Source: Phyllobates terribilis
Lineage: Eukaryota
Assembly: GCF_046119375.1 (NCBI RefSeq)
Contig: NW_027362762.1
Coordinates: 190,092,001 to 190,156,000 of the forward strand
Reading direction: 5' to 3'
Length of the DNA: 64,000 bases
A model generated the notes under the pieces. The model was not told the DNA's origin. It was given only the letters and a program-made list of their open reading frames with translations, and did no database searches. The translations under genes were made by a program, and so were the position numbers. Position 1 is the stretch's first letter. Each line of letters starts with the position of its first letter. Shown piece by piece: positions 4,144 to 61,830 of the stretch.

Positions 4144-7100
4144 GTAAGGAGCTCCGTGCACACTATCCGGGGGGCCACCCATCCAGTCACCTCATACACC
4201 GACCTGACCCTGCTCCTCACTGTGCCCCATCGTACTTGGCTACAGCGGTGTCGCTGGGGCTGAGGTGGGACGAGTGACAGACTGCTGCTGGTCATGGCGA
4301 GCTCCAGGCAGTCACGTCCATACACATCACCTTCCCCTCACTATGCAGGGCCGCACGGGGCAGAGGCAGATAATGCCCCCCATATGGAGCTGGCTGTCAG
4401 CCTATAGGGATTGAGACCCCTATGTGTGCTCCCACATAGGGGCCATATGTCACCTCCGCAGGGGGCTGATTTTAAGGTATCTAGTGTTACCCCAAATGTG
4501 CATCAGCCCTGGTCCACAGCTGCGGTTACATGGCGTCTCCAGTCTGCAGCCGCCACGGCCAGTCACAGGTGTGTCCGATGTGGACGTCTGGTGTGAAGCT
4601 ACATGCGTGTGACGGCGGTGCGGTCCTTGACACGCGTGTCACAGCGGTGCATAAAGAAAAAAACGTATGTCTCACATTACACTGCAGCTAATCGTCTGTC
4701 AGCGTACGGTCACACGGGGCAGCTACCACCAGAAACATCTGCTGTGGCAAATCTGCACCACATTGTTTTTCTCTGCGCAGATCTGTCTGTGAATTTGCTG
4801 TTGCAGATAGGATAAAGTACAAATAAACCCAAGCCGCGCTTCCATGGCTCCCCGGCCGGGTCTCCTGACAGTCTCAATATATCCCCACCTACACAACTGC
4901 CAATCAGTGGTGGGTTACACAGGGTTCATGAATATGGAGGACTACATGGCAGCAGGTTTACAAGTCCTCTAGTGATAATCTCCTGCTGATAAAACTGATT
5001 TTTATCAAAACTACAACAGGCAGCCCAGTAAGAGCATCTGGCATATCACTGTGTACAGCAGCCATCGTAGAAGCTAGATCAGAGATTACTGACAGTAACA
5101 TCGTGCAAAGGTTAAAACTGGTGACCATCGCAGCATGCAAGTGGTGTAGTAATCAGATGGTGTTATTCCTCGTGTACACACGACGACGTGTTCTGAGCAG
5201 TCACCTGCAATGACGAGTACGCTTTACATCGGATGTCAGAGATTTCTGCATGTAAAATTGACTTGCTACGTCAGCTTCTGTTTATCGTTTTCTGTGCCAT
5301 ACACTATGTATTCCTCTAATGGTGTCTGCAGGGCATTGTGGGAAGAGAAAAAACAAAAACTTCCAGTTCTTACTATCTTTAAGGTCTCGTTTTTGCTAAT
5401 AGATGGCGATGAGATTTTTTTTTTTCTTTTCTGCAAATACGCTAGCTGATTTGCAAAATCCACATTCTCAGCTGTAACATTCAGATTTTGCTTTGGATTT
5501 ACCCCTGCTACATTGAAAGGTCAAAATGGGGTGAATCCTCAGCAAAACTCACATACACCTGCCGCATGTGGACCCCAACTTATTGGCAAATCGATGAGGT
5601 GAATATTAACATTTTGGCTCATGAATAGTTATTAGTAATGTCAATCCCTTTTATAATAGAGTCCTGGAGCGTTGATTTTAACTTCCCCACAATCCCTTGC
5701 AAACACCATGAGCAGAACATATACTATTTCCATTGGTGATGTCTCAGCATATCCTGACATACACAGCTATGGTTACACCATCTATCTATATGGGAAGTTG
5801 CGTGTCTAGGTCGCAGCGAGTTTATATAACATGGTATAATTAATGAAATGTCTTTGTGAATGGGGTAGGACCAATTTCATATTTCCTGGAACAGATCTTT
5901 AGTTCTGTAAGACTGTCAGTAAAGTCTCTGGGCCTGGAGGAATGCTGGTTTGGCCAGACACATCAGTGAGCTAAGGCTCTGCTTCTGGTTAGGATACTGA
6001 TCCAGTATATGTCATTAGAGCTGTATGAGCTAAATGTGTCAGGATCCGGAGTAACACAGCAAAAAATAAACCCCCAGTGTAAGTTGTGTGGAAACATAAA
6101 TATCCATAGTCTTAAAATCCCTGGCACAGCAACCAGGGATTGGTAGACGGTGTGAAAAACGGGTCTATTTTCATCCTGTGGGCTGTGGTGCCTGTAAGCT
6201 AAGGTTCCGATCCCACTATTTATCCACACTCCATCTCATTCAAAAAGGATCCACAAGAAAAGCCCCTCTCTATATGTGAGCTGGCTATAATATCCAGCTG
6301 GGTAACACAACTGGGGGCGGAGATGGCTCAGATCACAGCTGTTTAAGGGGAGTTTATTCAGAACAAAGTGACCAGCACAAGTGCTGTGTACACAGGGGGC
6401 CAAGCAGTTCAGAGCACCTTTCCTCCTACTTTTATTGTTTTTTTTTTATATATAGATCGGTCCTTCTGGCTCCTGTAAGCCAGAAATGTCAGTCAAAGGC
6501 AAAGGGGGCGTAAATCAATGTAAAAGGTGGGAAGGTGCACTAAACTGCTCAAGCAGGTGCTCCTTGCGTGGCTGAGTGGTCACTTTGTGATGACAGACTT
6601 CCTTTAACCCCTTTAGATGTTCTGGTCACTAGCAATTGTGGCATCTAAGTGGTTGACAGGGCAAATCATGTGCATGTTAGAGCAGTGTAATATATAGGTG
6701 AGCAAGCATGATCAAATCTCCAAGTAGGACTAAGAAAATATCTTAAGCAAACGTTAGAAAATATAAGCAAAAGTTGTAGCCTTGCACAAGCCTGGCAGGC
6801 TCCAGCTCTCTACCATTCCACCTTTACCTCATTTCTTCCATCTGTCTAACCCCCACCTTTACACCTCATGATGAGTGTGGATTCGGTGGGCTCAGTACAT
6901 CTATAGTGCAAGTTTCATTAGCTAGCAGCAACCTTTATCTGCAACTTGCTTCAACTATTTCTGCCTAGATCACCTTTTCTACTGTTCAAGCACTTGGCAT
7001 ATTGTCATGTTAGGTTTTTGTCTACGGAAAAAAAAATCCCTTTCCCATCATAAAATTCTTTGTGTAACAAAAACAAACTATGATGGTAGGTATGAAAAAT

Positions 7101-7467
7101 AAAAAAAATGGTATTTCTGTAATCATTCTGAATTGCAAAATAAAGTTAAAGGGGTTGTCCACTACAAGGAGAACCCCTTCTTGATCTAAATGTTTGGTCC
7201 CGATAAAATAAAAAAAGCTTATACTCCCCTTCCGTGCTGGCGCCTTCCCAGCACCTTATTTTATCAGGGCCAAGTTTGGGGTATGACAAGGAATTGTCCA
7301 AGTAGTGGTTATAATGTTATTTCTGATACATAGTGAACACCATGAAAACAATGCGCCAGTAGAATGACTAACAAAATCTATCTGATTCTTGTTTGTCCTG
7401 CAGGATTAAGGGAGGACAATGAATGCAGTAACCTAGCATCTACAGTGCCCCATTGGTGGGGCAGAAG

Positions 7468-8865
7468 ATGGAGAAGCAAATTAGTACAGAGAGTGGTAGA
7501 CTGGCCACTCCAGTACACTCTTATTGCAATAACTCCCATGAAAGGAATGGCACACACCAATCTGGACCAGGAAACTACTGTGGCCTTTCTGCTTGCGGAC
7601 ATGTAAAACATGCATTTGAACACATTGGTGACGGATCGCCAGACACAGTATCAGAGATGTTCAGGAACCATCAGTCTTTTGTGCCTAAGCACAGTTGCTT
7701 CCATGATTCTGATGGAGCTCCTCAGCTTTCAGAAATGGCTAGTGAGGTGTGGACTAAGGAATTTCTCTCTGGTGAAGCATCTGGATACAATATTACGGAA
7801 TTTCCTGAAGAACCAAAACATCTACAAGAAACTACAGCTTACGAAGGTCAAGAATCACCACAATTGGTCAACTCTGATTGTGACTGTTTTAGTGGTGGCA
7901 CGTACTCTGATATTGGCCACCATACTTGTAGCCAGGACTGCCAGCATTTTTCTTGCTACCAGCAGCAGTCATTGAATGAGGATGGAGGTGAAGAGGAAAT
8001 TTCTAGCAGATTTGCAGAGGATGATTCTTCCAAAGGAATAAGTGGTAGAAAAGGTCGTAGAGGAAAATCCCGGAATAGTTCCAGGGACGAGTCCAAAAAG
8101 GACGCTCGACAAGCTCCAGCTAGCGGCAAGCACAAACTTGGTCGCAAAAAAAATCACGGGGATGGGAGACACCAGCTGAGATCCCTTGTTCCTCAGCCAT
8201 TGCTTCAGTTTTCTAATTATTGTATTCAGGTTCTTATCGATTTGGTGCTGTTGATCGGTGAATGTGTGGAGTCACTCGGCATGCTGTTGTATACGACGGT
8301 TTGGCTTCCTGCTCACGACTTGGGCAGTTTCAGAAGTCAAATATTGACCTTTGGATTATGGGTAAAACATTGTGCTAAAGATTTTTGGGTCCTCGTTTGC
8401 TATTGTGGATCATGGATTTTACGTGTTCTTAAGATGTTGTTTGCTTTGCTCTTCCTGCTGCTTATGCTTTCTGTGCGCTGCGCTCGACTTTGTTGGCAGT
8501 ATATTAAGAAAACCGTGGACAGAGTTGGAGAAGATAGCAACTGGAGATCCTGGATTTCTACTAGACTGCATACAATCTGGGCCTTAGTAACACAAAACAG
8601 GACTTGTAAGCGTTTAGTCAGTCAGTTCAGAAGATGGACAGGGAAATTATGGCCTTCCAAATTAACTACACAAAAAGAATCTCCATGGACCTCAGCGGGA
8701 TCTCCCAGCACGGGAGGCCGCTTCCCGCCCAGACATGAAGTGGAACGATTGCTGTCTATGGTTAATATTCCTGAGGAGGATTTAAATCCATTTCAAGTGT
8801 TGGGAGTAGAGATGGACGCTAGTGATGTAGAGCTTAAAAAAGCTTACAGACAGCTGGCCGTGTTG
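7468..8865 (+). CDS. DNAJC14: DnaJ homolog subfamily C member 14, coding exon 1 (acceptor at 7403, ATG at 7468)
   Basis: 466 codons with TM region and start of J-domain (LNPFQVLGVEMDASDVELKKAYRQLAVL); donor TTG|GTGAGT at 8866. Confidence 0.95.
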
Positions 8866-9689
8866 GTGAGTATTAATTTTTTTTTGTTAATGTATCAGTG
8901 GATGAGGATTTATTTTTTTTAAAAACATTTTGCTAAAGAGGTGTTTTTCGCTTAAAAAAATTGGTAATATAGCTAATATTATAAACTTGCCCATAGATGA
9001 CCATATGACCTAGGGTATATCAGTGCGGCATATCTTAAGTGTGTGACTAAACGAAACCAAACCAATGCATCTAAACAGCTTGTCCACGGCTCCTGAGTAC
9101 TGCATAAATGACAAAAAAAAAATCTATATTTGCCTCCTGGACCAACACTGCTCTTCGGCTCTTGGCCATGTTCCCCTGCCGGTCTCCTCACGTAAACTCA
9201 CAGGACTGCTGCAGACAGTTGGTGATCACTGATCAGCAGCAGCCTGCTAAGTTCTGTCCAAGCAGAAGAACAGTTTTTCTTCCACTCGGGATGAAAATGT
9301 GAATACTTGATTGGATTGTATACAGAGTAGTGTCAGCTGGGAGTGTGAAGTGTCTTAAGATCCTCACGGCAGCCGCTTAAAAACTCTGCCTGCCTCTTGA
9401 TTGATGTCTACTGCAATATGTCCCTGAAGATCACATGGGAGGGTTTAGTAAGAGCTGTCGCCGAAAGCTCACACTTTTCAGATAGAACACCTAGCGGACA
9501 TTTAAAGGGGTTCTCCAGTAGAAAAAAAATAACTAAAAATATTTAGTAATATATTTATGACAGACCTTTCCTTTTAGTTATTTAGTCACACTTGTTTTGT
9601 GTAGGGAGGTAATCACTATAGAATTAAAAAAGCTATTGCCTTACAACACTGATAAAAGTTTCCTAGAATGCTATTAGTACAGGTGCCTG

Positions 9690-9972
9690 TGAGCATGTGC
9701 AGTAGGAAGCTTCAACCACCTCTTTGTGTAGGAAGACGTGCCGTCAGTGGATATTCTGAGCTATACTGGAGATACCAGGGGTGCTGAAGTAAGAGGCTGC
9801 TCACACTGCTGTCCACCCTGTCTATCTGATCTATACTGGAGATATCATGTGTACTAAGGTAAGAGGATGCTCACACTGCTGTCCACCCTGTCTCTCTGAC
9901 CTAATACTGGATATACCAGATGTGCTGAGGCAAGAAGAGGCTGCTCACACTGCTATTTACCTTGTCTGTCTG
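9690..9972. repeat. Dispersed repeat containing three ~70-bp tandem units
   Basis: CTATACTGGAGATACCAGGGG..GCTCACACTGCTGTCCACCCTG units at 9761, 9831 and 9901; same family at 50305-50539. Confidence 0.8.
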
Positions 9973-11044
9973 CATTCACTATACATGATATAGATTATCT
10001 CCAATTCAAATCAGCGGAGCTTTCTTCTGCACATGCTCAGTCACCTATCCTAACATTTTAGGACCAATTTGTCAGTATAGCAAAGGGGTGGCTATTTTAA
10101 TTCTATACTGATTACATCTATTGGCAAAACCAAGTGTGATTCACTTATTAAAAGTATTTAGGAATTTATTCATTATGATATTTCCATTATTTTTTTCTAT
10201 TCCTAGAGAATTCCTTAGAGATTGTCTGGCCTTAAGCTACAAGTCTGCAGTCACTCTAAGTAACTGCAGACTTGTGAACTCTCACATCGTGTACGCTGTG
10301 AGGATTCTCAGGTGTCGGCAGTGGGTGATTGCCCACAACTATGTGATTTGCATACATGTGATCACGTGCAGAATAGATGGGCATGGCTTCGCTCAATACA
10401 AGTGTATTGCCCGAGGCCGGAAACACAGCCTAGTTGGAACGTGGCTAGAAGTATGCAAATCACATTTATGGTCACATGACCGCTTGCTCTTGGCGCCGGA
10501 GGATCTTTGCAGTGCTTCTGATGTGAGGATTCACCAGTTTGGGGTTTGACTGCACACCTGTAGTCTAGAATCTACAATCCTTTAATGAATTATTAGCGTA
10601 TGGCGTGAATGAATGAAAGATAAATTTTCTCCAATATGCTTGGTCTATGATAGGTGCTGGGGAATAAAATGCATAAATCCCCCGTTTTTTTTAATTTTAT
10701 TTAGTTGTGGTAAACGTTTATGGGGCTCCAGAGCATATTAGGAGCCTGACAATAAGATTTCCCAGGAATACATTTCTAGATGCATTGGCTGTGGGATTTG
10801 ACCAGCCCTCTTGTGCAGTATTTCAACAGACTTGAAACTATTACAGACTACTGCTTCACTCCAGAGACCGCATAGGAGAAGAGGTAATATGAGACTAAGC
10901 TGCACTTGTAAATGGATATGACAACACATATATTCAAAAAGCGCATAAATATTCACTTTGGCTAGAGACATATTGATGTCAATCTCTCCATTAGTTTAAG
11001 AAAAAGTGAAGGGAGTGGGTTACTCAAATATTAGTACCTATATA

Positions 11045-12650
11045 CTGTACAGACCAAAAGTTTGGACACACCTCATTTAAAGATTTTTCTGTATTTTCAT
11101 TACTATGAAAATTGTACATTCACACTGAAGGCATCAAAACTATGAATTAACACATGTGGAATTATATACTTAACAAAAAAGTGTGAAACAACTGAAAATG
11201 TCTTATATTCTAGGTTCTTCAAAGTATCCACCTTTTGCTTTGATGACTGCTTTGCACACTCTTGGCATTCTCTTGATGAGCTTCAAGGGGTAGTCACCGG
11301 AAATGGTTTTCACTTCACAGGTGTGCCCTGTCAGGTTTAGTAAGTGGGATTTCTTGCCTTATAAATGGGGTTGGGACCATCAGTTGTGTTGTGCAGAAGT
11401 CTGGTGGAAACACAGCTGATAGTCCTACTGAATAGACTGTTAGAAATTGTATTATGGCAAGAAAAAAGCAGCTAAGTAAAGAAAAGCAAGTGGCCATCAT
11501 TACTTTAAGAAATGAAGGTCAGTCAGTGCGAAAAATTGGGCAAACTTTGAAAGTGTCCCCAAGTGCAGTTGCAAAAACCATATCAAGCGCTACAAAGAAA
11601 CTGGCTCACATGAGGACTGCCTCAGGAAAGGAAGACCAAGAGTCACCTCTGCTTCTGAGGATAAGTTTATCCGAGTCACCAGCCTCAGAAATCGCAGGTC
11701 AACAGCAGCTCAGATTAGAGACCAGGTCAATGCCACACAGAGTTCTAGCAGCAGACACATCTCTACAACAACTGTTAAGAGGAGACTTTGTGCAGCAGGC
11801 CTTCATGGTAAAATAGCTGCTAGGAAACAACTGCTAAGGACAGAAGAGACTTGTTTGGGCTAAAGAACACAAAGAATGGACATTAGACCAGTGGAAATCT
11901 GTGCTTTGGTCTGATGAGTCCAAATTTGAGATCTTTGGTTCCAACCACCGTGTCTTTGTGCGACGCAGAAAAGGTGAACGGATGGACTCTACATGCCTGG
12001 TTCCCACCGTGAAGCATGGAGGAGGAGGTGTGATGGTGCTTTGCTGGTGACACTGTTGGGGATTTATTCAAAATTGAAGGCATACTGAACCAGCATGGCT
12101 ACCACAGCATCTTGCAGCGGCATGCTATTCCATCCGGTTTGCGTTTAGTTGGACCATCATTTATTTTTCAACAGGACAATGACCCCAAACACACCTCCAG
12201 GCTGTGTAAGGGCTATTTGACCAAGAAGGAGAGTGATGGGGTGCTACGCCAGATGACTTGGCCTCCACAGTCACCAGACCTGAACCCAATCGAGATGGTT
12301 TGGGGTGAACTGGACCGCAGAGTGAAGGCAAAAGGGCCAACAAGTGCTAAGCATCTCTGGGAACTCCTTCAAGATTGTTGGAAGACCATTTCCGGTGACT
12401 ACCTCTTGAAGCTCATCAAGAGAATGCCAAGAGTGTGCAAAGCAGTCATCAAGGCAAAAGGTGGCTACTTCGAAGAACCTAGAATATAAGACATTTTCAG
12501 TTGTTTCACACTTTTTTGTTAAGTATATAATTCCACATGTGTTAATTCATAGTTTTGATGCCTTCAGTGTGAATGTACAATTTTCATAGTCACGAAAATA
12601 CAGAAAAATCTTTAAATGAGAAGGTGTGTCCAAACTTTTGGTCTGTACTG
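11045..12650 (+). mobile_element. Tc1-like transposon, DD38E (Intruder-like), defective
   Basis: TA flanks; ~180-200 bp TIRs (CAGTACAGACCAAAAGTTTGGACAC); transposase 11454-12489 ([19 protein letters not shown]; 38 residues between D and E) with a frameshift and small deletions. Confidence 0.92.
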
Positions 12651-13739
12651 TATAAATACAAAGGTATTCATTAAACCACTCAGATACTAAAATACATACT
12701 TAGTTGAAAATTTTTTAAACATACTACACAAACATGGGATTTAAAGAGGAAGAATCAAGTAAACAGGATGGTAGATCCAAGTAAAATGGTCAGTATTCAC
12801 AGCTATAACATATTAAATATGGCTACCATTCACATAAACAGTATGACACAAGTAAGGAAAAGCAAAACCATACTTTGAATAGTGAAGTGTCACTGCTTAC
12901 CTATGATGTGATATCAGGACCACCCTGACGCACGTTTTGCACAGGTGCTTTCTCAAGGGGAGTGTCTGAATAGTCGTAGGTGAGTATATAAATACTCTCC
13001 TGTGTTTCAGAGGAATCATACCTTAAGACAAGTTTGGCACAAGGAGAAAAGTCTGCTGGGCAGACCCTCTCTTTCTTGGCTTGATTGTGTGTAGAAAGCG
13101 ACCAGTCAGATATATTGCATAATTGACAGTTTTTTTCATTTTATTCTGAAACATGGCAGCATTTCAGAATGAATGACATATCTCCAATGATGGAGCTTAT
13201 CTGGATTTCATACCTGTAGTTTGAGCAGCATGTATCCCCTGGCAAGTTCCCCTTTATGCCCGTAGAACCTAGAATGACAGTTCGGTCCGTTTGTTTTTTC
13301 TGATATGATCCTGTTCCTTTTTGGCTTTTAAATCATGTAAATGAACTAGTAGAATTGGGTAGTTCGAGCTAATTTTTCTCTTTAAATCCTTTTATTATTT
13401 TTGCATGCTAGACCCGATCTTATTGGTTTTATATAGATCAGAACTTCCCTTTTTAAGCAAAGTGTTTAAATGCGCAGTGCATTGTGTGATGGGACAGCTC
13501 TAGTTTGTCGTGGCTCCTATGTACATTCCCTCAGCGATCCTAGCCATGACTACAGGAAGTGGTTGAGGAACATCCATTCTTTGTGGATAGCTCTTGATGA
13601 AAGTTGGGGCATTTTAGTCGTGGGTTTCATTTGAACATGGAGTATCATGAGTAGTGACGATGTTCTACTATTTAGAAATCTTTTCCTTCCCTCCTTTTTT
13701 AATGTGTTTTTTTTTTTTTTTTTTTTTTTTGTGTGACAG

Positions 13740-33733: not shown

Positions 33734-34377
33734 TTAAGCAAACTTTGCTGATCTATGGCAAGTAGATATTTGATTTGGTCAAGAAACAATTCAGACGATC
33801 ATGCAGATGATAAAGGTTACTACGCCTACCATCAGAACCTGCTCACTGGCAAATCAGACTGAGAACTCATTCAACTCAGCTGAAAGTGTCCACTAAAAGC
33901 TGTTAAAGACATGTTCTGCACAGTAACAATTACCATTGTAAAACCTGCAGAACCTGCTCCACGAAGGACGGGAAACCAGCTGTATAATCATGTCACATAC
34001 TCCATTCAGTGCATCTCCAAAGGAGGATTACATCAATTACAATATTCAGGCAAGGTTTACAATTTTAATAGGTTTAACCAGCAACCATTAGTTGTTTGTG
34101 GGATTAAGCAAAGCACAAGTCTATATGAATCATATCCCTTAGGTCATGTTCATACACAGCAGGTTATTTCCGGAATCATGTGACACTCTAGCGGCAGTAA
34201 TTCCCTGCTGTGGTCATTTGATGCAGTGACATTATGCCCAACATGTCCTGAAATCCAGATCTAAATCTGTAAAATACCAATTTTGGCTTGGCTGATATAC
34301 AAAACCTAATAAAGAGCATTTAAAGAACTGTCAAGGGAGGAAAACAGTCAGAAAAAGAATGTGCTCTGAATACTTAC

Positions 34378-51229: not shown

Positions 51230-53527
51230 GCGAATTGCCTGTACAGGGCATTTGCTGCGTTTCAATTAAAGCCAATGGGCGGTGAAACGCTGCAGGTGGT
51301 ACCCGGGTCGGCAGAGGAGGAGTATTACTCATATCATCCGACCGCCACTCCTGCTGACAAAAGCAAGAGTGGCTCGGCTGAGGGGAGTAGTACTGTCCTC
51401 AGCCGAGCTGGGTACCACGCGGTGTTAAAATAAAAATTAAAAAAAAAAAAAAAAAACTTCTCACCTGTCCGGCGCCTTCGGGTGTCCTCCCGATGTGTTC
51501 AGGCTGGGGGTACACTGCGGGGAGTGTACTGTGCTACTAGGACCTGCGGTCACGTGACGGTCATTTGAGCTCTCAGCTGAAGAATGTTCCCACCAGTACT
51601 GTTGATGAGTCCACCAGAGCTGATCAGTTGATCTTCAGCTGATGAACCCCAGTGACCTCACTCCTGCAGCAGCAATGTACACTGACAGGGAGTGATTTTA
51701 CATTCCTCCTGTCAGTATACATTGCTGTCTTCTACATCCGGGCGGCAATCGTGACGGAATTGTGGACAACGTAGTGACGACGGACAGGTGAGGGATATGG
51801 TTGTTTTTTATTTTACGTTTTTTTCGGGAGATTCGGGGACTGAGTATAATAAAAAAAAAAAAAAAAATTGAAAGTGTGTTTTTTATTTCATTAAAATACT
51901 TTTATTCTGGCTGTGTATTTATTGAAAAAGTGCCGACAACTTTACTACACGCTTATTAATGGGGGCGTCTTATAGACGCCCTCCATTACTAACCTGGGCT
52001 TCACGTCAGCTGCCAATACAAGGCTGACGTGAACCTCAACCCATTTACCCCACTTGCCACCGCTACAGGGCAGTGGGAAGAGCGGAGGCTAAACGCCAGA
52101 TTTGGCGCATCTTATGGATGCGCCATTTCTGGGACTGCTGAAGGGTGATATTATTAGCTGCGGAGGGGGCTGGTATCCATGGCCCCTTCCCTGGCTATTA
52201 ATATCAGCCCACAGATGTCTGTTTAGCCTTTTCTGGTTAGATTTTAGAGGGGGACCCTACGTCAATTTTTTTCTGGGGTCCCCATCTAATCTAGCCAGTA
52301 AAGGCTAAACAAACAGCTGTGGGCTGATATTAATAGCCAGGAAACCTTGTTGGCTAATGGCCCCTTCCCCAGCTACTAATATCAGCCCCCAGCGGTCGGC
52401 TTTCCCTCTGCTGGTGATAAAAATGACGCGGGAACCCACGCCATTTTTTTTAAAATAAATTTTGGGCTCTGTGCCCACTATCCGGACGTAGCAGTGCTTT
52501 GGACCCATATTTTTGCTGCGTCCAAAACGTTGCAATCTATTGAACGCAGGTAAATCCACATGTGTTCACTGACCCATGCGGATTTATCATATTCAATACA
52601 TTCTAGTGGTCAAATTTATGTTGCGGAGACTAGCGACTCCACAAGAGAATTTGACATGCTACGGTCCTGAAAGACACGCTGCATGTCAGTGTTCGTGGGT
52701 GATTCGCAGCCTCAGATGCACACATAGCAGACATGGGATTTCTAGAGATCCCATCCACTATACTGTAAAATCTAGACGCTGCGGGTTTGATTCTGTATAA
52801 ACACGCAGTGTCAAACCTGCAGCGGCTCCTGATCATGGCCACGTGTCCAAACTCACCCGCAGCATGTCAACTTCTGTAGCGGACACGCTAGTCTCCACTG
52901 CAGACTTTGACCAATTGAAGTGTCATTATATGCAGTGGATTCACATGTACTGACAACAAGAGTGCGGCAGTAGAACACCGCGTTTTGAATGCAGCAAAAA
53001 TACACTGCTTCCAAAGAGCTGCTTGTAGATGTGTGTGGGGACGTAGCGGCTAACGAAACAGCTTTGAGCTGTTAATAATGACCAGGTACCATGTTTGCCT
53101 AATGGCACCTTCCTAGGCTAAAAATAGCAGCTCACAGCTGTCCCAGAAATTACATTAATGGAAATGCTAATGACATTGGGTGAATGGGATTAGCTGACAC
53201 CTAGCTCTTTTGTTTGGTGATAAGGTGTTAATCAGACCCTTGCATCACCAAACCTAATTAAAGTAAATAGTTAAACACACAGAGCAAAGACTTTATTTGA
53301 AATACAACAGACACATTCTTTAATCATTTAAATTAACCAATATACTCACCCCAGTTCTCACGGTAATCCAAGGGTTAAAGCAATGTCCCACCAAATAACT
53401 TTATTTAGCTCCAAAAACATTCATTTATGTACAAAAATGCAGCAAAACAGCATGTTTTTTCCTGTGAAGGAGATGCAGAAATGCTGCGGAAATTTCTGCT
53501 TCAAATCCTGAATGTGCGCACATAGCC
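51230..53527. mobile_element. Composite multi-hairpin non-autonomous element, Harbinger-like right end
   Basis: Many internal inverted repeats; ends CACATAGCC-TAA; left boundary uncertain. Confidence 0.5.
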
Positions 53528-55318
53528 TAAAGGGATTTTCCTCTCTTAGATTAATTTTCAATGGGCCCAGTGAAGGGAAATTTAAAACAAGTTTCAATGC
53601 TTCTCTTCTCAACATGGTCTGATCCTTCACATTTGCTGCTGATACCTTAAGTCAACATTCTATGAGGGCAGCTTGTGACCTCTGCAGCCAGTTGTCGGCT
53701 ACTGAATGGCTGCTGCCTTTGCATTTAGTCCACGTGGAAGAATCCAAGAGTGTGAAGGCTGCAGCTGATCAGCAGTCACTGATGTTGATGCCCTGAGCTC
53801 AGCCCGATGTGGAACACAAAGTGCGGAAGAGATGCCACCACATGATTTTTTTTTTTTTATTATTATTTTTCCATTTTGGTCCTATTGACAACTGATTTTA
53901 AGAGGGGGGTGTAACATTTTTAACCCCTTCCTGACTTGTGACGTACATGTACTTTACACATCGGGTGCCAGTGTATGGAGCAGGCTCCCTAGCTGAGTCC
54001 GCCCTACACATGGTAGATGACAGCTGTGTCATGCAGCCATCATCCACTTAAATGACAGCAACCGGAGCTAGCTCTGATTATTGTTGCCGTTTTACATATT
54101 AAATGCCACTGTCAGTATGATGGGCCATTTCTAGCTCCCATTTGCTCCCACACGAAATGATGGAAGCCACTGGGTTGCCGTGACAGCTGGTCCCTGCGAA
54201 CGCTCCCATGGCTGCTAGCTTTATTTATTTGTTTTTTATCGGTCGACCATGACAGCACCACGAGAGAGGGGATCCGCCCACCAAGGACAGGAAACCTTCA
54301 GGCTTAAAAGAGGCGGCCCTTTCTTCTCGCCTCAGTTTTGGTTTCCTGTCCTTGATGGAGGGAACCTCTGACAGGCTTACCTGTGAAGATGTCTGGAAGA
54401 AGTGTGCTGTCGAGCTGCGCCCCTGTCTGGGATCAGCAGCTCCAGTACCGTCCTGTGCCCTGGGCTGTGGGAGCTGCGCCCCTGTCTGGGGTGGCAGCTC
54501 CAGCCAGATGGATCGTGATGACGGAGGCTGCGCCCCTATCTGGGGACGGCAGCCCCAACTTGAGGTGGGCACAGCATTGGGGGGCTGCGCCCCTGTCTGG
54601 GATTGGCAGCCCCAGACCTGCGATCAGGACGCTGGGGGAGCGGCACCCCGTCCGGGGTGGGGCCGCCCCTAGCAGCAGGTGAACGCTAGCTGGAGCAGGC
54701 AGCTGGAGGGAGAAAGCGCCGATTACGGGAGCAGCTCCTCTATGACCAGCACCGCAGGATGCGGCGCCCCCGTATTCTTCCGGTCTTTTACTAGGCTGGG
54801 GGCGGGGTCTGATGCCGGGCGGTCATATGACCAGACAGGAAGTCCGGTCCACATGCATGCAGACGCCGCGTGAGTGCTGCATTCTCCCCTCCAACCAGCA
54901 GATGGCAATGTAAAAAAAAAAAGAGGGGAAATTAAAGGGAAGTAGACGCTCCTATTTAAGCATCCAGATATCGCTGCTCTAAGCTTCCCATCTACTTCAG
55001 AACTCTATTGTTAATGGATTCTGAAGACGAGCAGCAGCAAATCCAGCGGCCGCTGCTTTCTCCATCTCCGCGGTCGCCTGGGGAGTCCCAGGAGACATGA
55101 CCCCCCTCGAGTCACCAGCAATTCTCGGACTTCAGGTAGACGAACCCGGTCCAGCCATCGTGACTCTAACAAGATGGACGAATCTGCAGCCCCTAGGGGA
55201 CGATCCCCTGGCTGAGAAAGGTCCTCCAGCTAAACCGGTACCGGCTATTTGAGCTCTGGGTAAGTGATCTTCGAGAAAGTTCACTTGGGTAATAAGGTGT
55301 CCATTCTTATCCGTTTAG

Positions 55319-56550
55319 GGGAAGAAGTGTACTTCCAAAACCAAACACAAGCAATGTGTTATACGAGGCCCTATTGGCGTACTCATATTCCAAAAGACTG
55401 TGCCAGTCCTGCATAAACCAAACTTTGGTGGATGAGACCCCTAGTTTTGCCTCAGGCTTAAAAACCCTAGTTAAATCAGAGGTGAGCAAACTCCTCTGTA
55501 AAAAGTGTAAGCGGAAGGAAGCTAACCATGAGGTCTCCCCAACTCCTGATTATTCCCTATCATCAGCTGAGGAGGTGGACTCTTCTTTATCCTCCTCATC
55601 CTCGGATAGTGGTTCAGGCCAGCACTGCTTTCCGTTAAATGAAGTTGACGAGTTGGTTAAAGCGGTCCGCTCAACCATGGGCATTATGGACCTCAGACCA
55701 GAGAAGTCAGTCCTAGATGTCATGTTCAGAGGACTGGGGCAGAGGAAGAGAAAATGTTTCCCGTTTAATGATAAACTTCAGGGTCTAATCAATAGAGAGT
55801 GGCAAAAGCCGGAAAGAAAGGGTTCTCTCCACCCATTCTTTAAAAGAAAGTACCCCTTTGAGGACTCGGCCTCCTCCTCCTGGGAGAAGGCTCCCAAACT
55901 AAATGCAGCCATAACTAAAGCTTCTAAAAAGTCATCTCTCCCCTTTTGATGATATGGGGCCCCTTAAAGATCCTCTGGACAGAAAAGCGGATATGTTTCT
56001 CAAAGGCACTTGGGAAACAACTGCTGGGGCTTTAAAACCGGCAATTGCTGCAACTTGCACAGCTAGATCTTTGATGATCTGGCTAGATCATCTGTAATCG
56101 CATTTAGAAAACAACACATCCAGGAAAGAGATCTGGTCTAGTATCCCACTCATGCAGGGGGCAGCAGCCTTCCTAGCGGATGCTTCCACGGACTCTGTTA
56201 AGTTAGCTGCTAGATCGGCCGCCAAGTCTAATGCAGCCCGCAGGGCCCTGTGGCTCAAGTGTTGGCCGGGTGACATCCAGGCTAGAACTAGACTCTGTGC
56301 TATACCTTGCGAAGGGGAACATCTCTTCGGTCCAGTCCTGGATGAAATCCTAGACGAAGCAAACGACAGGAAGAAAGGTTTCCCTAGCCTGTCCATGCCT
56401 GCCTATAAGCGGTCTTTTCGCAGGAGAAGATTTGTGCGTAAAAAGCCACAGAAAGGCCAGGATAAATGGGAAGACCGTAAACCAAAAGGTAGAGGTCTTC
56501 TGTTCAGTACGTCATTTTCCACTCGGGAGCCCTGGAAATCGAGTCAATGA
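55319..56550 (+). pseudogene. DIRS ORF1 (gag-like; C4 Zn finger, LKDPLDRKAD motif)
   Basis: Frameshifts near 55362 and 55945; stop at 56095. Confidence 0.8.
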
Positions 56551-58420
56551 CTCGTAGCTCAGGTAAGGGGGAGGCTGACGGGTTTCTTACCTGCCTGGAC
56601 AAAGATATCAGCCAGTAACTGGATCCTTAATCTGATAGGTTTGGGTCTGAGATTCCAGTTCCAAGCAGTTCCTCCTGGACGGTTTATCTTGAACCCCGGT
56701 TCGTTCCTCTATATCAGAACAACTCGCTCTTCAGGAAGAAGTACTGGACCTTGTTCATAAAGCAGTCCTGGTGGAGGTCCCGGCGTCTGAAAGGGGGTTG
56801 GGATCTTGCTCCCCTCTCTTTCCGGTCTCTAAGCCGGACGGTTCTTTCAGGTGTATTATATTTAAAAGCCCTGAATACATTCTTGATAATCCCCACCTTC
56901 AAAATGGAATCGATAAGGTCAACAATAAAATTCCTGTTTCCAGATTGTTACATGGTAGTTTTGGATTTGAAAGACGCCTATTACCATGTACCTATCCATA
57001 CAGATTACCAGAAATATCTTAGAGTGGCTGTGGTTATAGGTGGGGTAATCAAGCACTTTCAATATATGGTCCTGCTGTTCGTTCGGTTTAGCCATAGCCC
57101 CCCGGGTATTTACCAAAATTGTGGCAGAGGTAATGGCTCATGTTAGAGAGCATGACATATTAATTATCCCTTATCTGGATTATTTCCTGATAGTTGGTAA
57201 CTCAGCCCTTCAATGTAGTAAGCATCTAAAAATAGTGATCTCCATCTTAGAGAATCTGGGCTGGGTCCTCAATTTAAATAAATCTAGGTTAACGGCCACA
57301 AAAGTTCAGCAATTCTTAGGAGTTATGCTGGATTCAGATTCTCAGACATGTTACCTCCCTGAAGCCAAAAAACTAAGGATCAGGGATCAAGTAAGAAGGG
57401 CAGTGTCAAACCCAGTCATGTCCCTGAGAGCTGCGATGTCCCTGTTAGGTACCCTGACATCTTGCTTCCTGGGGTTCTGTGGGCTCAATATCACTCCAGG
57501 ATTTTACAATGGGATGTACTGCATAATGAAGTTATGTTGAAGGGGCGCTTGGAGGGGAGGTTTTCCTTGTCTTCCCGGTCAGTTGAATCCTTACAGTGGT
57601 GGGATAATGAAGTGAACTTATCCAGAGGGGTCCCCTGGGTTTTTAGAACAACCCGAACAATTACTACCGATGCCAGTTTCAGTGGGTGGGGTCCCATCTG
57701 GGAGATATTGTAACCCAGGGGTCATGGTCTAATTTGGAAAAGAGTCTCTCCCCCCAACGCTAAAGAGTTGCTAGCGATAGACAGGGCAGTCAATTATTTT
57801 CTAGTTTTTCTTCAAAATCGTGATGTAAAAGTTTTCTCTGATAATAAAATCGCAGTAGCTTACGTGAACCACCAAGAGGGTACATGATCAAGAACTCTGA
57901 GAGTTGCGGATCATCTCTTTCAGGTCTTGGAATGCCATCTTCGTTCCCTACTAGCCCTTCATATAAAGGGAAAAGAAAATTCAAGGGCAGACTACTTAAG
58001 CCGCTATACCCTGAGACAGGGGGAATGGGAACTAAATCAGGACATTTTCTCCCAAATTGTCCAAAGATGGGGACCTCCAGTAGTGGACTTGTTTGCTACA
58101 AAGTTAAATCGGAAAACTCAGCGCTTCTGTTCCCTGGATCCCAAAGAAAAACCACTGGCAGTAGACGCTCTCCAGATACCTTGGGGGTTCAGTCTAGCCT
58201 ATGCCTTTCCCCCGTTAACCCTTCTTCCTATGGTTATCAGGAAGATCAGGGAGGACAAGGCGAGAGTTCTGCTGGTCGCACCCTTTTGACCCAGGAGGCC
58301 CTGGTTCTCATGCCTCAGGAGCATGTCTGTGTCAGATCCTTGGGTTCTACCAGAAGTTCCGGATCTCCTCTTCCAGGGTCCTATAGTCCATCCTCAAGTG
58401 TCTGGCCTCCACTTGACGGT
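56547..58420 (+). pseudogene. DIRS RT / RNase H / methyltransferase-like ORF
   Basis: DLKDAYYHVPI; YLDYF (catalytic DD altered); TTDASFSGWG; VDLFA..YAFPP; several frameshifts. Confidence 0.88.
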
Positions 58421-58429
58421 ATGGAACTT

Positions 58430-59446
58430 GAAGGGGAGCTATTAAGAAAAAAGGGATTCTCCCAAGGCTTAGTGACAACCTTAATGCGTAGCCGTAAGCC
58501 TATTACAACCAGAATTTATGCGAGAACATGGAAGAAGTTTTTATCTTTTTCCGGTTCCAGAGTCGGTGAGGAGGCTCCAATAAGTAAAATTCTAGAATTT
58601 CTGCAAAAAGCTCTTGAGTTAGGGTTAGCCACTAGCACCCTGAAGGTTCAGGTGTCCGCCTTATGCGCCTTATATAGCTGTGATCTGGCGAGTAATTATT
58701 GGATTTCTCGTTTCATTAAAGTCCAGGCCCATTGTCAAAAGCAAATTGGTACCCTGGGATCTAAATTTGGTTCTTAAAGCCTTAACTGGTCTACCCTTTG
58801 AGCCAATAGAGTTAGCCACTCTTAAGTCCCTCTCCCTTAAAACAGCACTTCTGATAGCTTTAACGTCTGCTAGGAGAGTTAATGATATTCATGCCCTGTC
58901 TTCAGCCTTGCCCTTCACTCAGATCCTGGATGATAAAATAATTCTTAAACCTGATCCCACCTATCTTCCTAAAGTAGCTACCCGTTTTCACAGACTCCAA
59001 GCAGTAGTCTTACCCTCCTTCTGCCCTAATCCGGGTAACCGGAAAGAAGAAGAGTTTCATACACTAGACGTAAGGAGATTTATAATTAGGTACCTCTTGG
59101 TCACCAGAGAGTTTAGAAAAGATAGTTCGTTATTTATATCCTACCAAGGTGTTAGGAAAGGCTCTAAAGTCACAAAGTCCACCATAGTTAGATGGATCAG
59201 GGAGGCTATTTCCCTAGCTTATACATTCAGCGGTGAGGAAATACCACAAGAATAGAAGGCTCACTTCACCTGGGCAGTGACTACCTCCTGGGCGGAGAAG
59301 ACTGGTGTCTCGATAGAAGACACATATGTAAGGCTGCTGCCTGGTCTTCTCAGTCTACCTTCTATAGGCACTATAGACTGGATTCGGGTGTTTCGTTTCA
59401 TTTCACTTTTGGGAGAAGGGTGCTCCAAGCTGTAGTCCCTCCCTAA
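58430..59446 (+). pseudogene. DIRS tyrosine recombinase
   Basis: LTSARRV; HTLDVRR; AHFTW (HxxR degenerate); TFYRHYRL; frameshift ~58720-58770 and stop at 59253. Confidence 0.88.
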
Positions 59447-60268
59447 ACTTCTTCATCTCTGTAATTCTCTCGTGGTGCTGTTATGGTCGACCGATAAAGT
59501 CATAAGTTACTTACCCGTAACGGGATTTTTCGGAGACCATGACAGCACCCTTTTATTCCCTCCCTTCACATTGGTGGGAGCACTCCTTGTTTATTAATTT
59601 TCACTCTTAAGTTGGTGATTTATAGAAATGTTGGTTTATCATGTTTTGCTATGTCTACTAACCTGATGGTCCTCTCAATGCTCTGTAATCCAAACTGAGG
59701 CAAGAAGAGAGGGCCGCCCCTTTTAAGCCTGTAGGTTTCCTGTCCTTGGTGGGCGGATCCCCTATCTCGTGGTGCTGTCATGTTCTCCGAAAAATCCCGT
59801 TACCGGTAAGTAACTTATGACGTTTCATCTCTCTTTTTATTTTTTACATATTAGAAATATTTATTTTATAATAAACCGAAGCAGAAAGGCTGGACTTCAT
59901 AGGAGACATAACTTTCTCTGTATGCTGCAATATTAGGAAAGTTTTTAAAAACATTAAAAAAAAAATCAAGATTCGTGTCACAATCCTTTTCTCAGTTTTA
60001 AAATTAAAAAAGATGTCTGGTATCATTTACGTTCATAAAAGTCCAATCTGTAAAATTTCAAACTTATTTAACTCATAGGTCAGCTCTTGCACCCTCTTAA
60101 AAAATGCAATAACTAGCTATCATAACTTTATAACTATTCTAAAATGGTGCCAACAAAAACCTCAGTTTGTCTTGCAAACGAACAAGCCTTCACATAGCAT
60201 TTTCATTTCTCCGTTGATGGAGCTATGCATCTCAGAAAAAAGGCAACACATACAATTTTTTTTATATA

Positions 60269-61830
60269 CACTGCTCAAAAAAAATAAAGGGAACACTCAA
60301 ATAACACATCCTAGATCTGAATGAATGAAATATTCTCATTGAATACATTGTTCTGTACAAAGTTGAATGTGCTGACAGCAAAATCACACACAAATCATCA
60401 ATGGAAATCAAATTTATTAACCAATGGAGGCCTGGATTTGGAGTCACCCCCAAAATTAAAGTGGAAAAACACACTACAGGCTGATCCAACTTTGATGTAA
60501 TGTCCTTAAAACAAGTCAAAATGAGAATTGTGTGTGGCCTCCACGTGCCTGTATGACCTCCCTACAACGCCTGGGCATGCTTCTGATGAGGTTGCGGATG
60601 GTCTCCTGTGGGATCTCCTCCCAGACCTGGACTAAAGCATCCGCCATCTCCTGGTCAGTCTGTGGTGCAACGTGACGTTGGTGGATGGAGTGAGACATGA
60701 TGTCCCAGATGAGCTCAATCGGATTCAGGTCTGGGGAACGGGCGGGCCAGTCCATAGCTTCAATGCCTTCCTCTTGCAGGAACTGCTGACACACTCCAGC
60801 CACATGAGGTCTGGCATTGTCCTGCATTAGGAGGAACCCAGGGCCAACCGCACCAGCATATGGTCTCACAAGGGGTCTGAGGATCTCATCTCGGTACCTA
60901 ATGGCAGTCAGGCTACCTCTGGCAAGCACATGGAGGGCTGTGCAGCCCACCAAAGAAATGCCACCCCACACCATTACTGACCCACTGCCAAACCGGTCAT
61001 GCTGAAGGATGTTGCAGGCAGCAGATCGCTCTCCACGGCGTCTCCAGACTCTGTCACGTCTGTCACATGTGCTCAGTGTGAACCTGCTTTCATCTGTGAA
61101 GAGCACCGGGCACCAATGGCGACTTTGCCAATCCTGGTGTTCTGCAGCAAATGCCAAGCGTCCTGCACGGTGTTGAGCTGTGAGCACAACCCCCATCTGT
61201 GGACGTCGGGCCCTCATACCACCCTCATGGAGTCAGTTTCTAACCGTTTGTGCAGACACATGCACATTTGTGGCCTGCTGGAGGTCATTTTGCAGGGCTC
61301 TGGCAGTGCTCCTCCTGTTCCTCCTTGCCCAAAGGTGGAGGTAGTGGTCCTGCTGCTGGGTTGTTGCCCTCCTACGGCCCCCTCCACGTCTCCTGGTGTA
61401 CTGGCCTGTCTCCTGGTAGCGCCTCCAGCCTCTGGACACTATGCTGACAGACACAGCAAACCTTCTTGCCACAGCTCGCATTGATGTGCCATCCTGGATG
61501 AGCTGCACTACCTGAGGAACTTCTGTGGGTTGTAAAGTCCGTCTCTTGCTACCACGAGTGTGAAAGCATAACCAATATTCAAAAGTGATCAAAACATCAG
61601 CCAGAAAGCATTGGTACTGAGAGGTGGTCTGTGGTCCCCTCCTGCAGAACCACTCCTTTATTGAGGGTGTCTTGGTAATTGCCAATAATTTCCATCTATT
61701 GTCTATTCCATTTGCACAACAGCATGTGAAATTGATTGTTCATCAGTGTTGCTTCCTAAGTGGAGAGTTTGATTTCACAGAAGTTTGATTTACTTGGAGT
61801 TATATTCTGTTGTTTGTGTTCCCTTTATTT
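60269..61830 (-). mobile_element. Tc1 DD34E transposon with nearly intact transposase
   Basis: TA-CACTGCTCAAAAAAAATAAAGGGAACAC TIR, other end truncated; frame 61547-60516 continuous apart from one TGA at 61235-61233 and a presumed start lost (AAG); FTDE, QDN and NPIE intact. Confidence 0.9.

What the first reader, a model, noticed from the sequence alone, without database searches (positions are those of the whole stretch)
54412..54672. Repeat-spacer array of five covarying hairpins in the DIRS leader
A ~33-nt repeat (GAGCTGCGCCCCTGTCTGGG..GCAGCTCCAG) occurs at 54412, 54471, 54526, 54582 and, diverged, at 54638. The copies are separated by largely dissimilar 22-25-nt spacers. The stems show compensatory changes: GAGCTGC/GCAGCTC becomes GGGGCTGC/GCAGCCCC and then GCGGC-ACCCC/GGGGT-GCCGC. 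The periods (59, 55, 56, 56) are not multiples of 3, which argues against a peptide repeat and for selected RNA or ssDNA structure. Possible roles are a Gag packaging/multimerisation platform, translational control, or processing sites that release small RNAs. I know of no description of this in DIRS elements. It looks CRISPR-like, but there are no cas genes.
Basis: partly seen in the sequence, partly recalled or inferred. Interest (0 to 1): 0.75.

Follow-up and report, generated by a model that had tools for sequence, protein, structure and literature searches.

The report
Hairpin repeat array in DIRS leader
Just inside the left end of a decayed frog DIRS retrotransposon lie five copies of a 35-base GC-rich hairpin separated by unrelated spacers; the array is real, non-coding and shared by the element's sibling copies, is nothing like CRISPR, and is most likely a cis-acting stem-loop module of the element's leader whose role is untested.

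Summary
Five ~35-nt palindromic units start at 54410, 54469, 54523, 54580 and 54636. The 18-nt core occurs 4 times against 0.02 expected.

The array lies 77-337 nt downstream of a TATA-like box plus Inr in the left inverted repeat of a canonical DIRS1-type element (54235-59824), and about 340 nt upstream of the gag ATG.

- **Core versus spacer:** cores are 76-80% alike; spacers are at random level (31% against 27% expected).
- **Pairing:** 60 of 65 stem cells pair. Two or three pairs carry compensated double changes (nominal P 0.001-0.05, from five units only).
- **Sibling copies:** contigs from public runs of the same species cover the array at far greater depth than the unique flank, so it belongs to the family and the spacers are inherited.
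- **Other family:** a Dendrobates DIRS has an equally GC-rich, structured leader but no repeated unit.
- **No matches:** nothing in Rfam, no protein relatives for the array ORF, no strand preference.

Best reading (about 0.42): selected single-strand hairpins in the genomic RNA or its cDNA. Rivals are a functionless palindromic repeat kept paired by template switching, and a DNA-level regulatory module. The CRISPR-like reading is rejected.

The parts
54235..54369 (+). Left inverted terminal repeat region of the DIRS element. Positions 54245-54343 pair with 59687-59785. The outer 33 nt (54235-54267) are complementary to the ICR. An internal palindrome joins 54267-54296 to 54340-54369.
54303..54337 (+). 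Candidate promoter inside the left ITR: TATA-like CTTAAAAG (54303-54310) and Inr-like TCAGTT (54332-54337, A at 54334). Both motifs recur in the Dendrobates element (L121 about 6405 and 6428-6433). The transcription start is inferred, not shown.
54410..54444 (+). Hairpin unit 1 (outer stem GAGCTGC/GCAGCTC, loop TGTCT), -17.4 kcal/mol
54445..54468 (+). Spacer 1 (24 nt), unrelated to the other spacers
54469..54503 (+). Hairpin unit 2, the best formed: 13 bp with one bulge and one G.U pair, -26.6 kcal/mol
54504..54522 (+). Spacer 2 (19 nt)
54523..54557 (+). Hairpin unit 3 (stem pair A-T replaced by G-C, loop TATCT), -23.3 kcal/mol
54558..54579 (+). Spacer 3 (22 nt)
54580..54614 (+). Hairpin unit 4 (G-C at the same pair as unit 3). 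At 54602 this copy reads A, which leaves one inner-stem pair open, while nearly all sibling contigs read G.
54615..54635 (+). Spacer 4 (21 nt)
54636..54670 (+). Hairpin unit 5, diverged (GCGGC/GCCGC and A-T replace GCTGC/GCAGC and G-C or G.T; 4-nt loop), -24.1 kcal/mol
54671..55013 (+). Rest of the GC-rich leader: further unrelated hairpins, an A-rich tract at 54911-54923 and a second TATA-like box at 54953-54960. There are 12 upstream ATGs between 54334 and 55013.
55014..56550 (+). gag region. ATG at 55014 opens a first exon-like segment that is broken by stops in this copy. A GT..AG interval lies at 55260-55318. ORF pieces follow at 55356-55949 and 56152-56550; the latter matches Pfam LAP2alpha.
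56751..57540 (+). Reverse transcriptase fragments in two frames (RVT_1, below the gathering score because the gene is split)
58680..59255 (+). Tyrosine recombinase fragment. It is 51-59% identical to frog and other proteins, one of which carries PF00589.
59466..59549 (+). Internal complementary region: 59466-59498 is complementary to the outer left ITR, and 59496-59549 to the outer right ITR
59687..59824 (+). Right inverted terminal repeat

Best explanation
The array is a family-specific module of five related stem-loops in the long (about 680 nt), GC-rich, non-coding 5' leader of a frog DIRS1-type retrotransposon.

It most likely arose by tandem duplication of a roughly 56-nt unit in the master lineage, long before the present copies were made. 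Since then the 35-nt palindromic cores have been kept able to pair, while the linkers drifted until no likeness remains.

The units act as hairpins on a single strand. That strand is either the full-length genomic RNA that starts in the left ITR, or the single-stranded minus cDNA copied from it.

My preferred role, by analogy only, is a multivalent cis-acting platform used in replication: binding of the element's Gag for selective packaging or dimerisation, or pausing of reverse transcriptase close to the 5' end, where DIRS must switch template to rebuild its ends.

Shown here: the repeat, its position, its family-wide presence, the contrast between cores and spacers, and the kept pairing. Inferred: that it is transcribed, that it is under selection, and what it does.
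For: - **Repeat is real and non-random:**
- **Position:** the array lies between a conserved TATA-like box plus Inr in the left ITR and the gag ATG of a canonical DIRS element.
- **Core versus spacer:** cores are 76-80% identical. Spacers are 31% identical against 27% expected from composition, and their pairwise alignment scores are no better than shuffles (P 0.73). Uniform neutral decay of a duplicated unit would not give this contrast.
- **Pairing:** 89-92% of stem cells pair, against 30-52% when partners are slid by 1-3 columns.
- **Compensated changes:** two or three pairs changed on both sides and still pair. One of these is the only pair of changes shared by units 3 and 4 (simulated P 0.001-0.05; covariation score 0.154 against 0.083, 16/500 shuffles). 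Compensated changes fit a hairpin and do not fit a palindromic site read by a protein dimer.
- **Family-wide:** sibling contigs from two independent DNA studies and two further runs of the same species cover the array colinearly. Depth in run X1 is 600-4,800 against 15-18 in the unique flank. Here the copy differs from the family majority at only 5 places: two in spacer 4, two at unpaired places of unit 5 and one in a stem. The unit divergence therefore predates the family's spread.
- **Structure:** the whole leader folds better than shuffles (z -3.75). So does the unrelated leader of a Dendrobates DIRS (z -3.47).
- **Not coding:** no protein relatives of the array ORF, no Pfam hit, and the frame is not kept across all units.
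- **Single-stranded intermediate:** DIRS-1 replicates through a single-stranded linear cDNA and its primer is unknown (PMC7192593).
Against: - Only five related units could be compared, and sibling sequences themselves could not be retrieved. The covariation evidence is thin and rests partly on a hand-made structural alignment.
- Template switching within quasi-palindromes makes compensated changes without selection (PMC8794818).
- The hairpins are equally stable on both strands, as RNA or as DNA, and the wobble and mismatch counts favour neither strand. RNA is therefore not shown.
- In 60% GC sequence, shuffles also give about 5 windows of -15 kcal/mol or better, against 7 observed. The gag coding region shows a similar z. 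Hairpin richness as such is mostly a matter of composition.
- Transcription of the leader is not shown: the runs that may be RNA are only guessed to be RNA, and contigs cannot show transcript starts.
- The related Dendrobates element does without the repeat.
- In Dictyostelium DIRS-1 a foreign cassette between the left repeat and ORF1 is tolerated.
Confidence: 0.42

Rival explanations
1. The array has no function. It is an old internal tandem repeat of a palindrome-bearing unit that rides along in the leader. The arms are kept complementary by a mutational process, not by selection: intrastrand template switching or quasi-palindrome correction during DNA replication or reverse transcription, or short-tract conversion among cores.
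For: - Internal tandem repeats are common in retroelement leaders (general knowledge).
- Template switching can create and maintain hairpins and mimic compensatory substitution (PMC8794818, PMC5453318).
- No strand asymmetry.
- A related DIRS lacks the repeat.
- Statistics rest on five units.
- A few low-depth sibling contigs skip or replace parts of the array (table 5).
Against: - Template switching homogenises the arms of one palindrome. It does not explain why five cores stay about 80% alike to each other while the linkers between them fall to random.
- Conversion tracts would be expected to drag in adjacent spacer.
- The loop TGTCT, which no arm-to-arm copying protects, is kept in three units and differs by one base in a fourth.
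- The main body of sibling contigs is colinear, and no well-supported insertion or deletion is listed inside the array (table 4).
Confidence: 0.25
2. The array works as double-stranded DNA. It would be a set of five spaced binding sites (an enhancer, insulator or CpG-rich promoter-proximal module) serving the ITR promoter upstream or a possible second promoter just before gag. This would be analogous to the Su(Hw) site array in the gypsy leader or to the monomers of mouse L1.
For: - Spaced repeats of a short conserved motif with free linkers are the typical layout of clustered factor sites.
- The palindromic units (about 13-nt arms around a 5-nt centre) look like sites for dimeric proteins.
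- The leader is 60% GC with GC boxes, and a TATA-like box at 54953-54960 lies 61 nt before the gag ATG.
- Twelve upstream ATGs make translation of gag from the full-length RNA awkward, which would suit a second promoter.
- No strand preference.
Against: - Compensated changes in both arms keep pairing but would change both half-sites of a protein site.
- CpG observed/expected in the array is only 0.36-0.55.
- The second TATA-like box is weak evidence: in Dendrobates it lies only about 36 nt before the ATG.
- No motif library was available, and my comparison with the CTCF consensus from memory gave three core mismatches.
Confidence: 0.2
3. The array is translated, either as an upstream ORF (ATG 54389 to stop 54680-54682, 97 codons) or as an N-terminal repeat peptide of ORF1.
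For: - Two + frames are open over the whole array, and an ATG lies just before it.
- Units 2-4 are in frame (spacing 54 and 57) and give AAPLSG three times.
Against: - Units 1 and 5 are in other frames.
- Two frames and the opposite strand are open, as expected for a stop-poor GC-rich repeat.
- The frame is closed by several stops before gag, and the gag ATG at 55014 is in another frame.
- No Pfam hit and no related protein among 5.8 billion.
- Conservation follows the palindrome, not codons.
Confidence: 0.04
4. The array is a CRISPR-like or small-RNA-producing locus: the repeats are processing sites and the spacers are guides against other sequences.
For: Only the repeat-spacer look and the hairpin-forming repeats.
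Against: - This is a eukaryotic retrotransposon.
- Repeats are only 66-89% alike.
- Spacers are inherited with the family and recur in diverged form in sibling contigs (table 5c).
- Spacers match nothing else in the window.
- Stems of 11-13 bp are too short for Drosha or Dicer substrates (general knowledge).
- No Rfam family.
Confidence: 0.02

Closest known systems
Packaging and dimerisation stem-loops in 5' leaders of retroviruses and LTR retrotransposons (HIV-1 psi SL1-4, MMTV, Ty1 TIPIRT domain; PMC8096270, PMC5454406, PMC6844567)
   Same: Several stable stem-loops lie between the transcription start and gag on the genomic RNA. The element encodes a Gag-like protein. Pairing is kept through sequence change.
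   Different: In those elements the stem-loops are unrelated to each other, not five copies of one unit. Binding and packaging have been shown there and nothing is shown here. DIRS uses a tyrosine recombinase and a single-stranded cDNA route, and no packaging signal has been defined for it.
Arrays of spaced protein-binding motifs or monomers in retroelement leaders (gypsy Su(Hw) insulator with 12 sites; mouse L1 5' monomers) - from general knowledge
   Same: A short conserved motif is repeated with free linkers inside the 5' untranslated part of a retroelement. The feature is family-specific and varies among subfamilies.
   Different: Those motifs act as double-stranded DNA and are not palindromic hairpins with compensated stem changes. 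No binding factor is known here.
Ordinary minisatellite or internal tandem repeat of a transposable element
   Same: Probable origin by tandem duplication of a roughly 56-nt unit; head-to-tail order; minor variants in some sibling contigs.
   Different: Only 60% of each period is still alike. Linkers are at random level, and TRF does not call the array. The five-unit layout is stable across the family majority.
CRISPR array
   Same: The visual pattern of a palindromic repeat alternating with dissimilar spacers of similar length.
   Different: The host is eukaryotic and has no cas genes. The repeats are diverged. The spacers are vertically inherited and not acquired. The whole array sits inside a mobile element's leader.
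DIRS1-like elements of other frogs (Dendrobates tinctorius locus L121; Xenopus DIRS survey PMC9210276)
   Same: Same ITR/ICR layout, the same TATA-like box plus Inr in the left ITR, a leader of about 600-700 nt at 60% GC that folds better than shuffles, and the same two-part gag start.
   Different: The Dendrobates leader carries several unrelated hairpins and no repeated core. The surveys I read do not mention leader repeats or hairpins.

Membership tests
DIRS1-like tyrosine-recombinase retrotransposon (the host element) | Inverted terminal repeats | tested here: met
   54245-54343 against 59687-59785: 99 nt, 92% complementary (alignment)
DIRS1-like tyrosine-recombinase retrotransposon (the host element) | Internal complementary region matching the outer ends of both terminal repeats | tested here: met
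   59466-59498 is complementary to 54235-54267 (97%). 59496-59549 is complementary to 59771-59824 (94%).
DIRS1-like tyrosine-recombinase retrotransposon (the host element) | Gag-like ORF, reverse transcriptase and tyrosine recombinase in that order | tested here: met
   LAP2alpha-like Gag piece, E 1e-6 (DIRS origin of that domain in PMC4495291). RVT_1 in two split pieces, each below the gathering score. The YR piece is 51% identical to a protein carrying PF00589. All genes are broken in this copy.
CRISPR array | Near-identical repeats | tested here: not met
   Unit identity 66-89%
CRISPR array | Spacers acquired individually, differing between otherwise identical loci, with cas genes nearby | tested here: not met
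   Sibling contigs carry the same spacers colinearly or as diverged homologues. The surroundings are DIRS genes in a frog genome.
Plain minisatellite | Units alignable over their whole length | tested here: not met
   TRF finds nothing at score 30. Spacer likeness equals shuffles, P 0.73. Column identity is 0.31 against 0.27 random.
Plain minisatellite | Unit number varies among copies | tested here: inconclusive
   No well-supported indel is listed inside the array. A few single low-depth contigs skip 78-204 nt. Only the best-supported rows are shown, and the contigs themselves could not be read.
Retroelement packaging or dimerisation signal | Lies on the genomic RNA between the transcription start and gag | tested here: inconclusive
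   The position fits a start at the conserved Inr (54334) and a gag ATG at 55014. The start itself is not shown. The runs guessed to be RNA hold contigs over 54338-54995, but contigs cannot prove a transcript.
Retroelement packaging or dimerisation signal | Stem-loops kept by compensatory change | tested here: inconclusive
   Two or three compensated pairs among five units, nominal P 0.001-0.05; the sample is too small
Retroelement packaging or dimerisation signal | Bound by Gag and required for packaging | not testable with these tools
   Needs binding and packaging experiments
Any Rfam family | Match to a curated covariance model | tested here: not met
   No match at E up to 1 over 53500-60500 on either strand

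The most novel reading that the evidence does not exclude
The five-hairpin array would be the first defined cis-acting nucleic-acid signal of a tyrosine-recombinase retrotransposon. It would be a modular, multivalent stem-loop platform on the DIRS genomic RNA (or its single-stranded cDNA) that recruits Gag or controls reverse transcription and end repair. It would have been built by duplication of one hairpin and kept by selection while the linkers randomised.
Probability: 0.25. Interest if true: 0.6.

Novelty: new variant of a known kind. Interest (0 to 1): 0.36.

Why it matters
Almost nothing is known about the cis signals of DIRS elements. The primer of reverse transcription, the packaging signal and the way Gag finds its RNA are all open questions (PMC7192593).

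A family-wide array of one hairpin repeated five times, with conserved stems and free linkers, gives a concrete and easily mutated candidate for such a signal in a vertebrate DIRS. It is also a clean natural case for asking whether paired arms are kept by selection or by template switching.

If the array is only a passenger repeat, it is of interest mainly for annotating this frog DIRS subfamily.

Tried and rejected
- **Rfam:** nothing over the whole element on either strand.
- **Tandem Repeats Finder:** does not call the array.
- **Metagenome scan for the 18-nt core:** more than 120 single chance hits in unrelated, mostly bacterial, contigs and none with two copies. It was useless and not followed. 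Contigs labelled human gut were not opened.
- **Other copies in the window:** none. A 19-nt ITR-like match at 33959 is isolated.
- **Sibling sequences through proteins:**
  - The Gag piece found only a Ranitomeya protein at 39% identity, and its DNA could not be fetched.
  - The YR piece gave short contigs without leaders, plus one usable Dendrobates locus.
  - The array ORF gave nothing.
- **Earlier notes of the scan:** by sequence, blank.
- **Spacers:** no match elsewhere in the window with up to 4 mismatches.
- **Long-range pairing:** no complementarity of 11 nt or more between the array and the rest of the element.
- **Strand test by wobble pairs and folding energies:** no preference.
- **Hairpin counts against shuffles:** 7 observed against a mean of 5.2 at -15 kcal/mol, not distinctive in 60% GC sequence.
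- **First compensation simulation on the MAFFT alignment:** P 0.22. I set it aside in favour because MAFFT offsets unit 5 by one base in the loop and inflates its change count. The result therefore depends on the alignment.
- **CTCF-site idea:** compared by eye with the consensus as I recall it. Three mismatches in the core; dropped as untestable here.
- **Second-promoter idea** (TATA-like box before gag): kept only as a note, because in Dendrobates the box is too close to the ATG.
Full report
**1. What is in the sequence**

Reading 54000-55200 and the repeat finder show five units of about 35 nt at 54410, 54469, 54523, 54580 and 54636. In-register spacing is 59, 54, 57 and 56 nt.

The 18-nt core GCTGCGCCCCTGTCTGGG, with up to three mismatches, occurs four times in the window. 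The expectation is 0.02, and no shuffle reaches four. The fifth unit is a diverged copy.

Each unit is an imperfect palindrome. Folded alone it gives a hairpin of -17 to -27 kcal/mol as RNA and -9 to -13.5 kcal/mol as DNA, on either strand. The same five hairpins appear in the minimum-energy folds of the array and of the whole leader.

Tandem Repeats Finder does not report the array at score 30.

**2. Where it sits**

The array lies inside an element with the textbook DIRS1 layout:
- **Terminal repeats:** 54245-54343 is the inverted repeat of 59687-59785 (99 nt, 92%).
- **Internal complementary region:** 59466-59549 is complementary to the outer 33 nt of the left repeat and the outer 54 nt of the right repeat.

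Between the repeats lie three broken genes:
- **Gag-like ORF pieces.** One matches Pfam LAP2alpha, a domain that derives from DIRS Gag (PMC4495291).
- **Reverse-transcriptase pieces.** There are two, in different frames.
- **A tyrosine-recombinase piece.** It is 51-59% identical to proteins from other amphibian or unknown sources, and one of these carries PF00589.

The closest Gag relative in the large protein collection is a Ranitomeya protein at 39% identity. Earlier notes of this scan call the genome a frog. "DIRS leader" is therefore right.

**3. Start of the leader**

In the left repeat, a TATA-like box (54303-54310) lies 30 nt before TCAGTT (54332-54337). The same pair of motifs is found in the left repeat of a Dendrobates tinctorius DIRS that I fetched (L121). 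This agrees with an earlier unchecked note of the scan (s1-230171).

If transcription starts at about 54334, the array occupies +77 to +337 of a leader of about 680 nt, which ends at the gag ATG at 55014. This ATG is homologous in position to the ATG of the Dendrobates element.

The start site is inferred. In Dictyostelium DIRS-1 the transcript also begins inside the left repeat (PMC7192593).

**4. Coding or not**

Two + frames and one - frame are open across the array, and an ATG at 54389 opens 97 codons. Against a coding role:
- Units 1 and 5 fall in other frames than units 2-4.
- The frame is closed several times before gag.
- The gag ATG is in another frame.
- There is no Pfam match.
- A search of 5.8 billion proteins with the array ORF found nothing.

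Open frames are expected in a stop-poor, 67-72% GC repeat. I rate coding at about 0.04.

**5. Cores against spacers**

Pairwise identity of the 35-nt cores is 66-89%: mean 0.80 by pairwise alignment and 0.76 by alignment columns. The spacers tell a different story:
- The summed pairwise alignment score of the five spacers is below the shuffle mean (P 0.73).
- Their column identity is 0.31, against 0.27 expected from base composition.
- They match nothing else in the window.

If the array began as a tandem duplication, the linkers have since diverged to saturation while the cores stayed alike.

**6. Pairing and compensation**

On the MAFFT alignment with my 13-pair structure:
- 89% of cells form standard pairs, against 30-52% when the 3' partners are slid by 1-3 columns.
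- Two pairs have changes on both sides.
- The covariation score is 0.154 against 0.083 in shuffles, and 16 of 500 shuffles reach it.

A structure-aware table corrects the one-base offset of unit 5 and gives 60 of 65 cells paired. The compensated pairs are:
- A-T in units 1 and 2 against G-C in units 3 and 4. These are the only two changes that units 3 and 4 share.
- T-A against G-C in unit 5.
- If the ancestor had G-C, the series G-C, G.T, A-T at the ninth pair.

Placing the observed number of changes at random on the 26 paired positions gives P 0.001-0.005 for three compensated pairs and P 0.02-0.05 for two. The cruder simulation on the MAFFT alignment gave P 0.22, because the offset inflates the changes in unit 5.

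The evidence is suggestive, depends on the alignment, and rests on five related units. It falls short of proof.

Wobble pairs and mismatches do not favour either strand. The + strand has two G.U pairs and five mismatches. The - strand would have four G.U pairs and three mismatches.

**7. Is it unique to this copy?**

No. I laid Logan contigs of four runs of the same species on 54100-56000 at 80% likeness. The runs were two DNA runs from different studies, one run guessed to be RNA and one of unknown kind.

Depths in run X1:

| Region | Summed contig depth |
|---|---|
| Unique left flank | 15-18 |
| Conserved ITR core | 254,000 |
| Array | 600-4,800 |
| Rest of leader and gag | 270-5,200 |

The tool warns that depth is not copy number, but the array clearly belongs to a multi-copy family. 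Single contigs run colinearly through it (for example 54338-54995 and 54360-54614).

In the array, this copy departs from nearly all sibling contigs at five places:
- 54602, in a stem; this copy's letter opens a pair.
- 54623 and 54624, in spacer 4.
- 54651 and 54659, both at unpaired places of unit 5.

The five-unit layout with its diverged units is therefore that of the family, and is older than the family's spread.

Contigs that carry other letters between two units (table 5c) show sequences that look like diverged versions of spacers 2 and 3. The spacers are inherited, not acquired.

Some contigs join the ITR edge (54297-54358) to 55197-55259. Relatives without this leader therefore exist. 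The first two units are about five times deeper than the last three, which means either wider sharing among subfamilies or multiple mapping.

I could not read the sibling contigs themselves, so a proper covariation test across copies remains undone.

**8. Another family**

The Dendrobates element (L121, about 6338-12973) shares several features:
- the same ends;
- the same ITR promoter motifs;
- a 60% GC leader of similar length that folds better than shuffles (z -3.47 against -3.75 here);
- an A-rich tract, and the same two-part gag start.

Its leader holds several unrelated hairpins and no repeated core. Beyond the ITR the two leaders do not align.

A GC-rich, structured leader thus seems common to these frog DIRS elements. 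The repeated hairpin is special to the family in this window.

One caution applies. In 60% GC sequence, shuffles give almost as many strong local hairpins, and the gag coding region shows a similar z. Structure as such is weak evidence.

**9. Explanation**

The contrast between conserved palindromic cores and randomised linkers, the kept pairing, the kept loop and the stable five-unit layout point to constraint on the cores in the master lineage.

Compensated changes fit a hairpin on a single strand. They do not fit a dimer-binding DNA palindrome, where changing both half-sites would not restore binding.

DIRS offers two single-stranded stages: the genomic RNA and the linear single-stranded cDNA (PMC7192593). 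I therefore favour a cis-acting stem-loop module of the leader at about 0.42. By analogy with retroviral and Ty1 leaders (PMC8096270, PMC5454406), the specific role would be Gag binding or control of reverse transcription near the 5' end. That role is inferred only.

The rivals, with my estimates:
- A passenger repeat whose arms are kept paired by template switching (PMC8794818): 0.25.
- A DNA-level regulatory module: 0.20.
- Translation of the array: 0.04.
- A CRISPR-like or small-RNA locus: 0.02.

**10. Known or new**

Internal tandem repeats and stem-loops in retroelement leaders are familiar. I found no mention of leader repeats, hairpins or UTR features in the Xenopus DIRS survey or in the DIRS1-like overview, and no Rfam family matches.

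I class the array as a new variant of a known kind, of moderate interest.

**11. Limits**

- All three word-index protein searches, the single run search and the single read-laying run were used.

Noticed in passing
window 55014-55330; L121 7052-7295: The gag start looks split in both frog DIRS elements. A short first segment runs from the ATG (window 55014, L121 7052). A conserved CTCTGG|GT(A/G)AGT donor-like site follows (window 55260, L121 7194). An acceptor-like TTAGG..AAG lies 59-96 nt further on, before the CxxC..CxxC part of Gag. In the window copy the first segment carries five in-frame stops. In L121 it is open. This agrees with earlier scan notes of a spliceosomal intron in DIRS gag.
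   Followed up: partly
window 54303-54337; L121 6405-6433: A TATA-like box and an Inr-like TCAGTT at matching spacing inside the left ITR of two different frog DIRS families. The sequence just downstream (54340-54369) is repeated in the right ITR (59734-59763).
   Followed up: partly
window 54911-54960; L121 6886-7022: An A-rich tract followed by a second TATA-like box shortly before the gag ATG, in both elements. It could mark an internal promoter, but in L121 the box is only about 36 nt from the ATG.
   Followed up: no
window 54334-55013: Twelve upstream ATGs in the predicted 680-nt leader. Cap-dependent scanning to the gag ATG from a full-length RNA would be inefficient.
   Followed up: no
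L121 5674-6335 and 13014-13680: In Dendrobates, about 660 nt directly left of the DIRS element is repeated directly right of it (84-93% identity, spacing about 7342). The repeat includes runs of a 43-nt tandem repeat. This could be a duplication spanning the insertion, or an insertion into a repeated element.
   Followed up: no
window 54228-54483 (read laying bins): The ITR core is enormously abundant in the species' reads (summed depth 254,000 against 15 in the flank). Units 1-2 of the array are about five times deeper than units 3-5.
   Followed up: no
window 33959-33977: An isolated 19-nt match (2 mismatches) to the DIRS ITR motif on the minus strand, with no DIRS sequence around it.
   Followed up: partly
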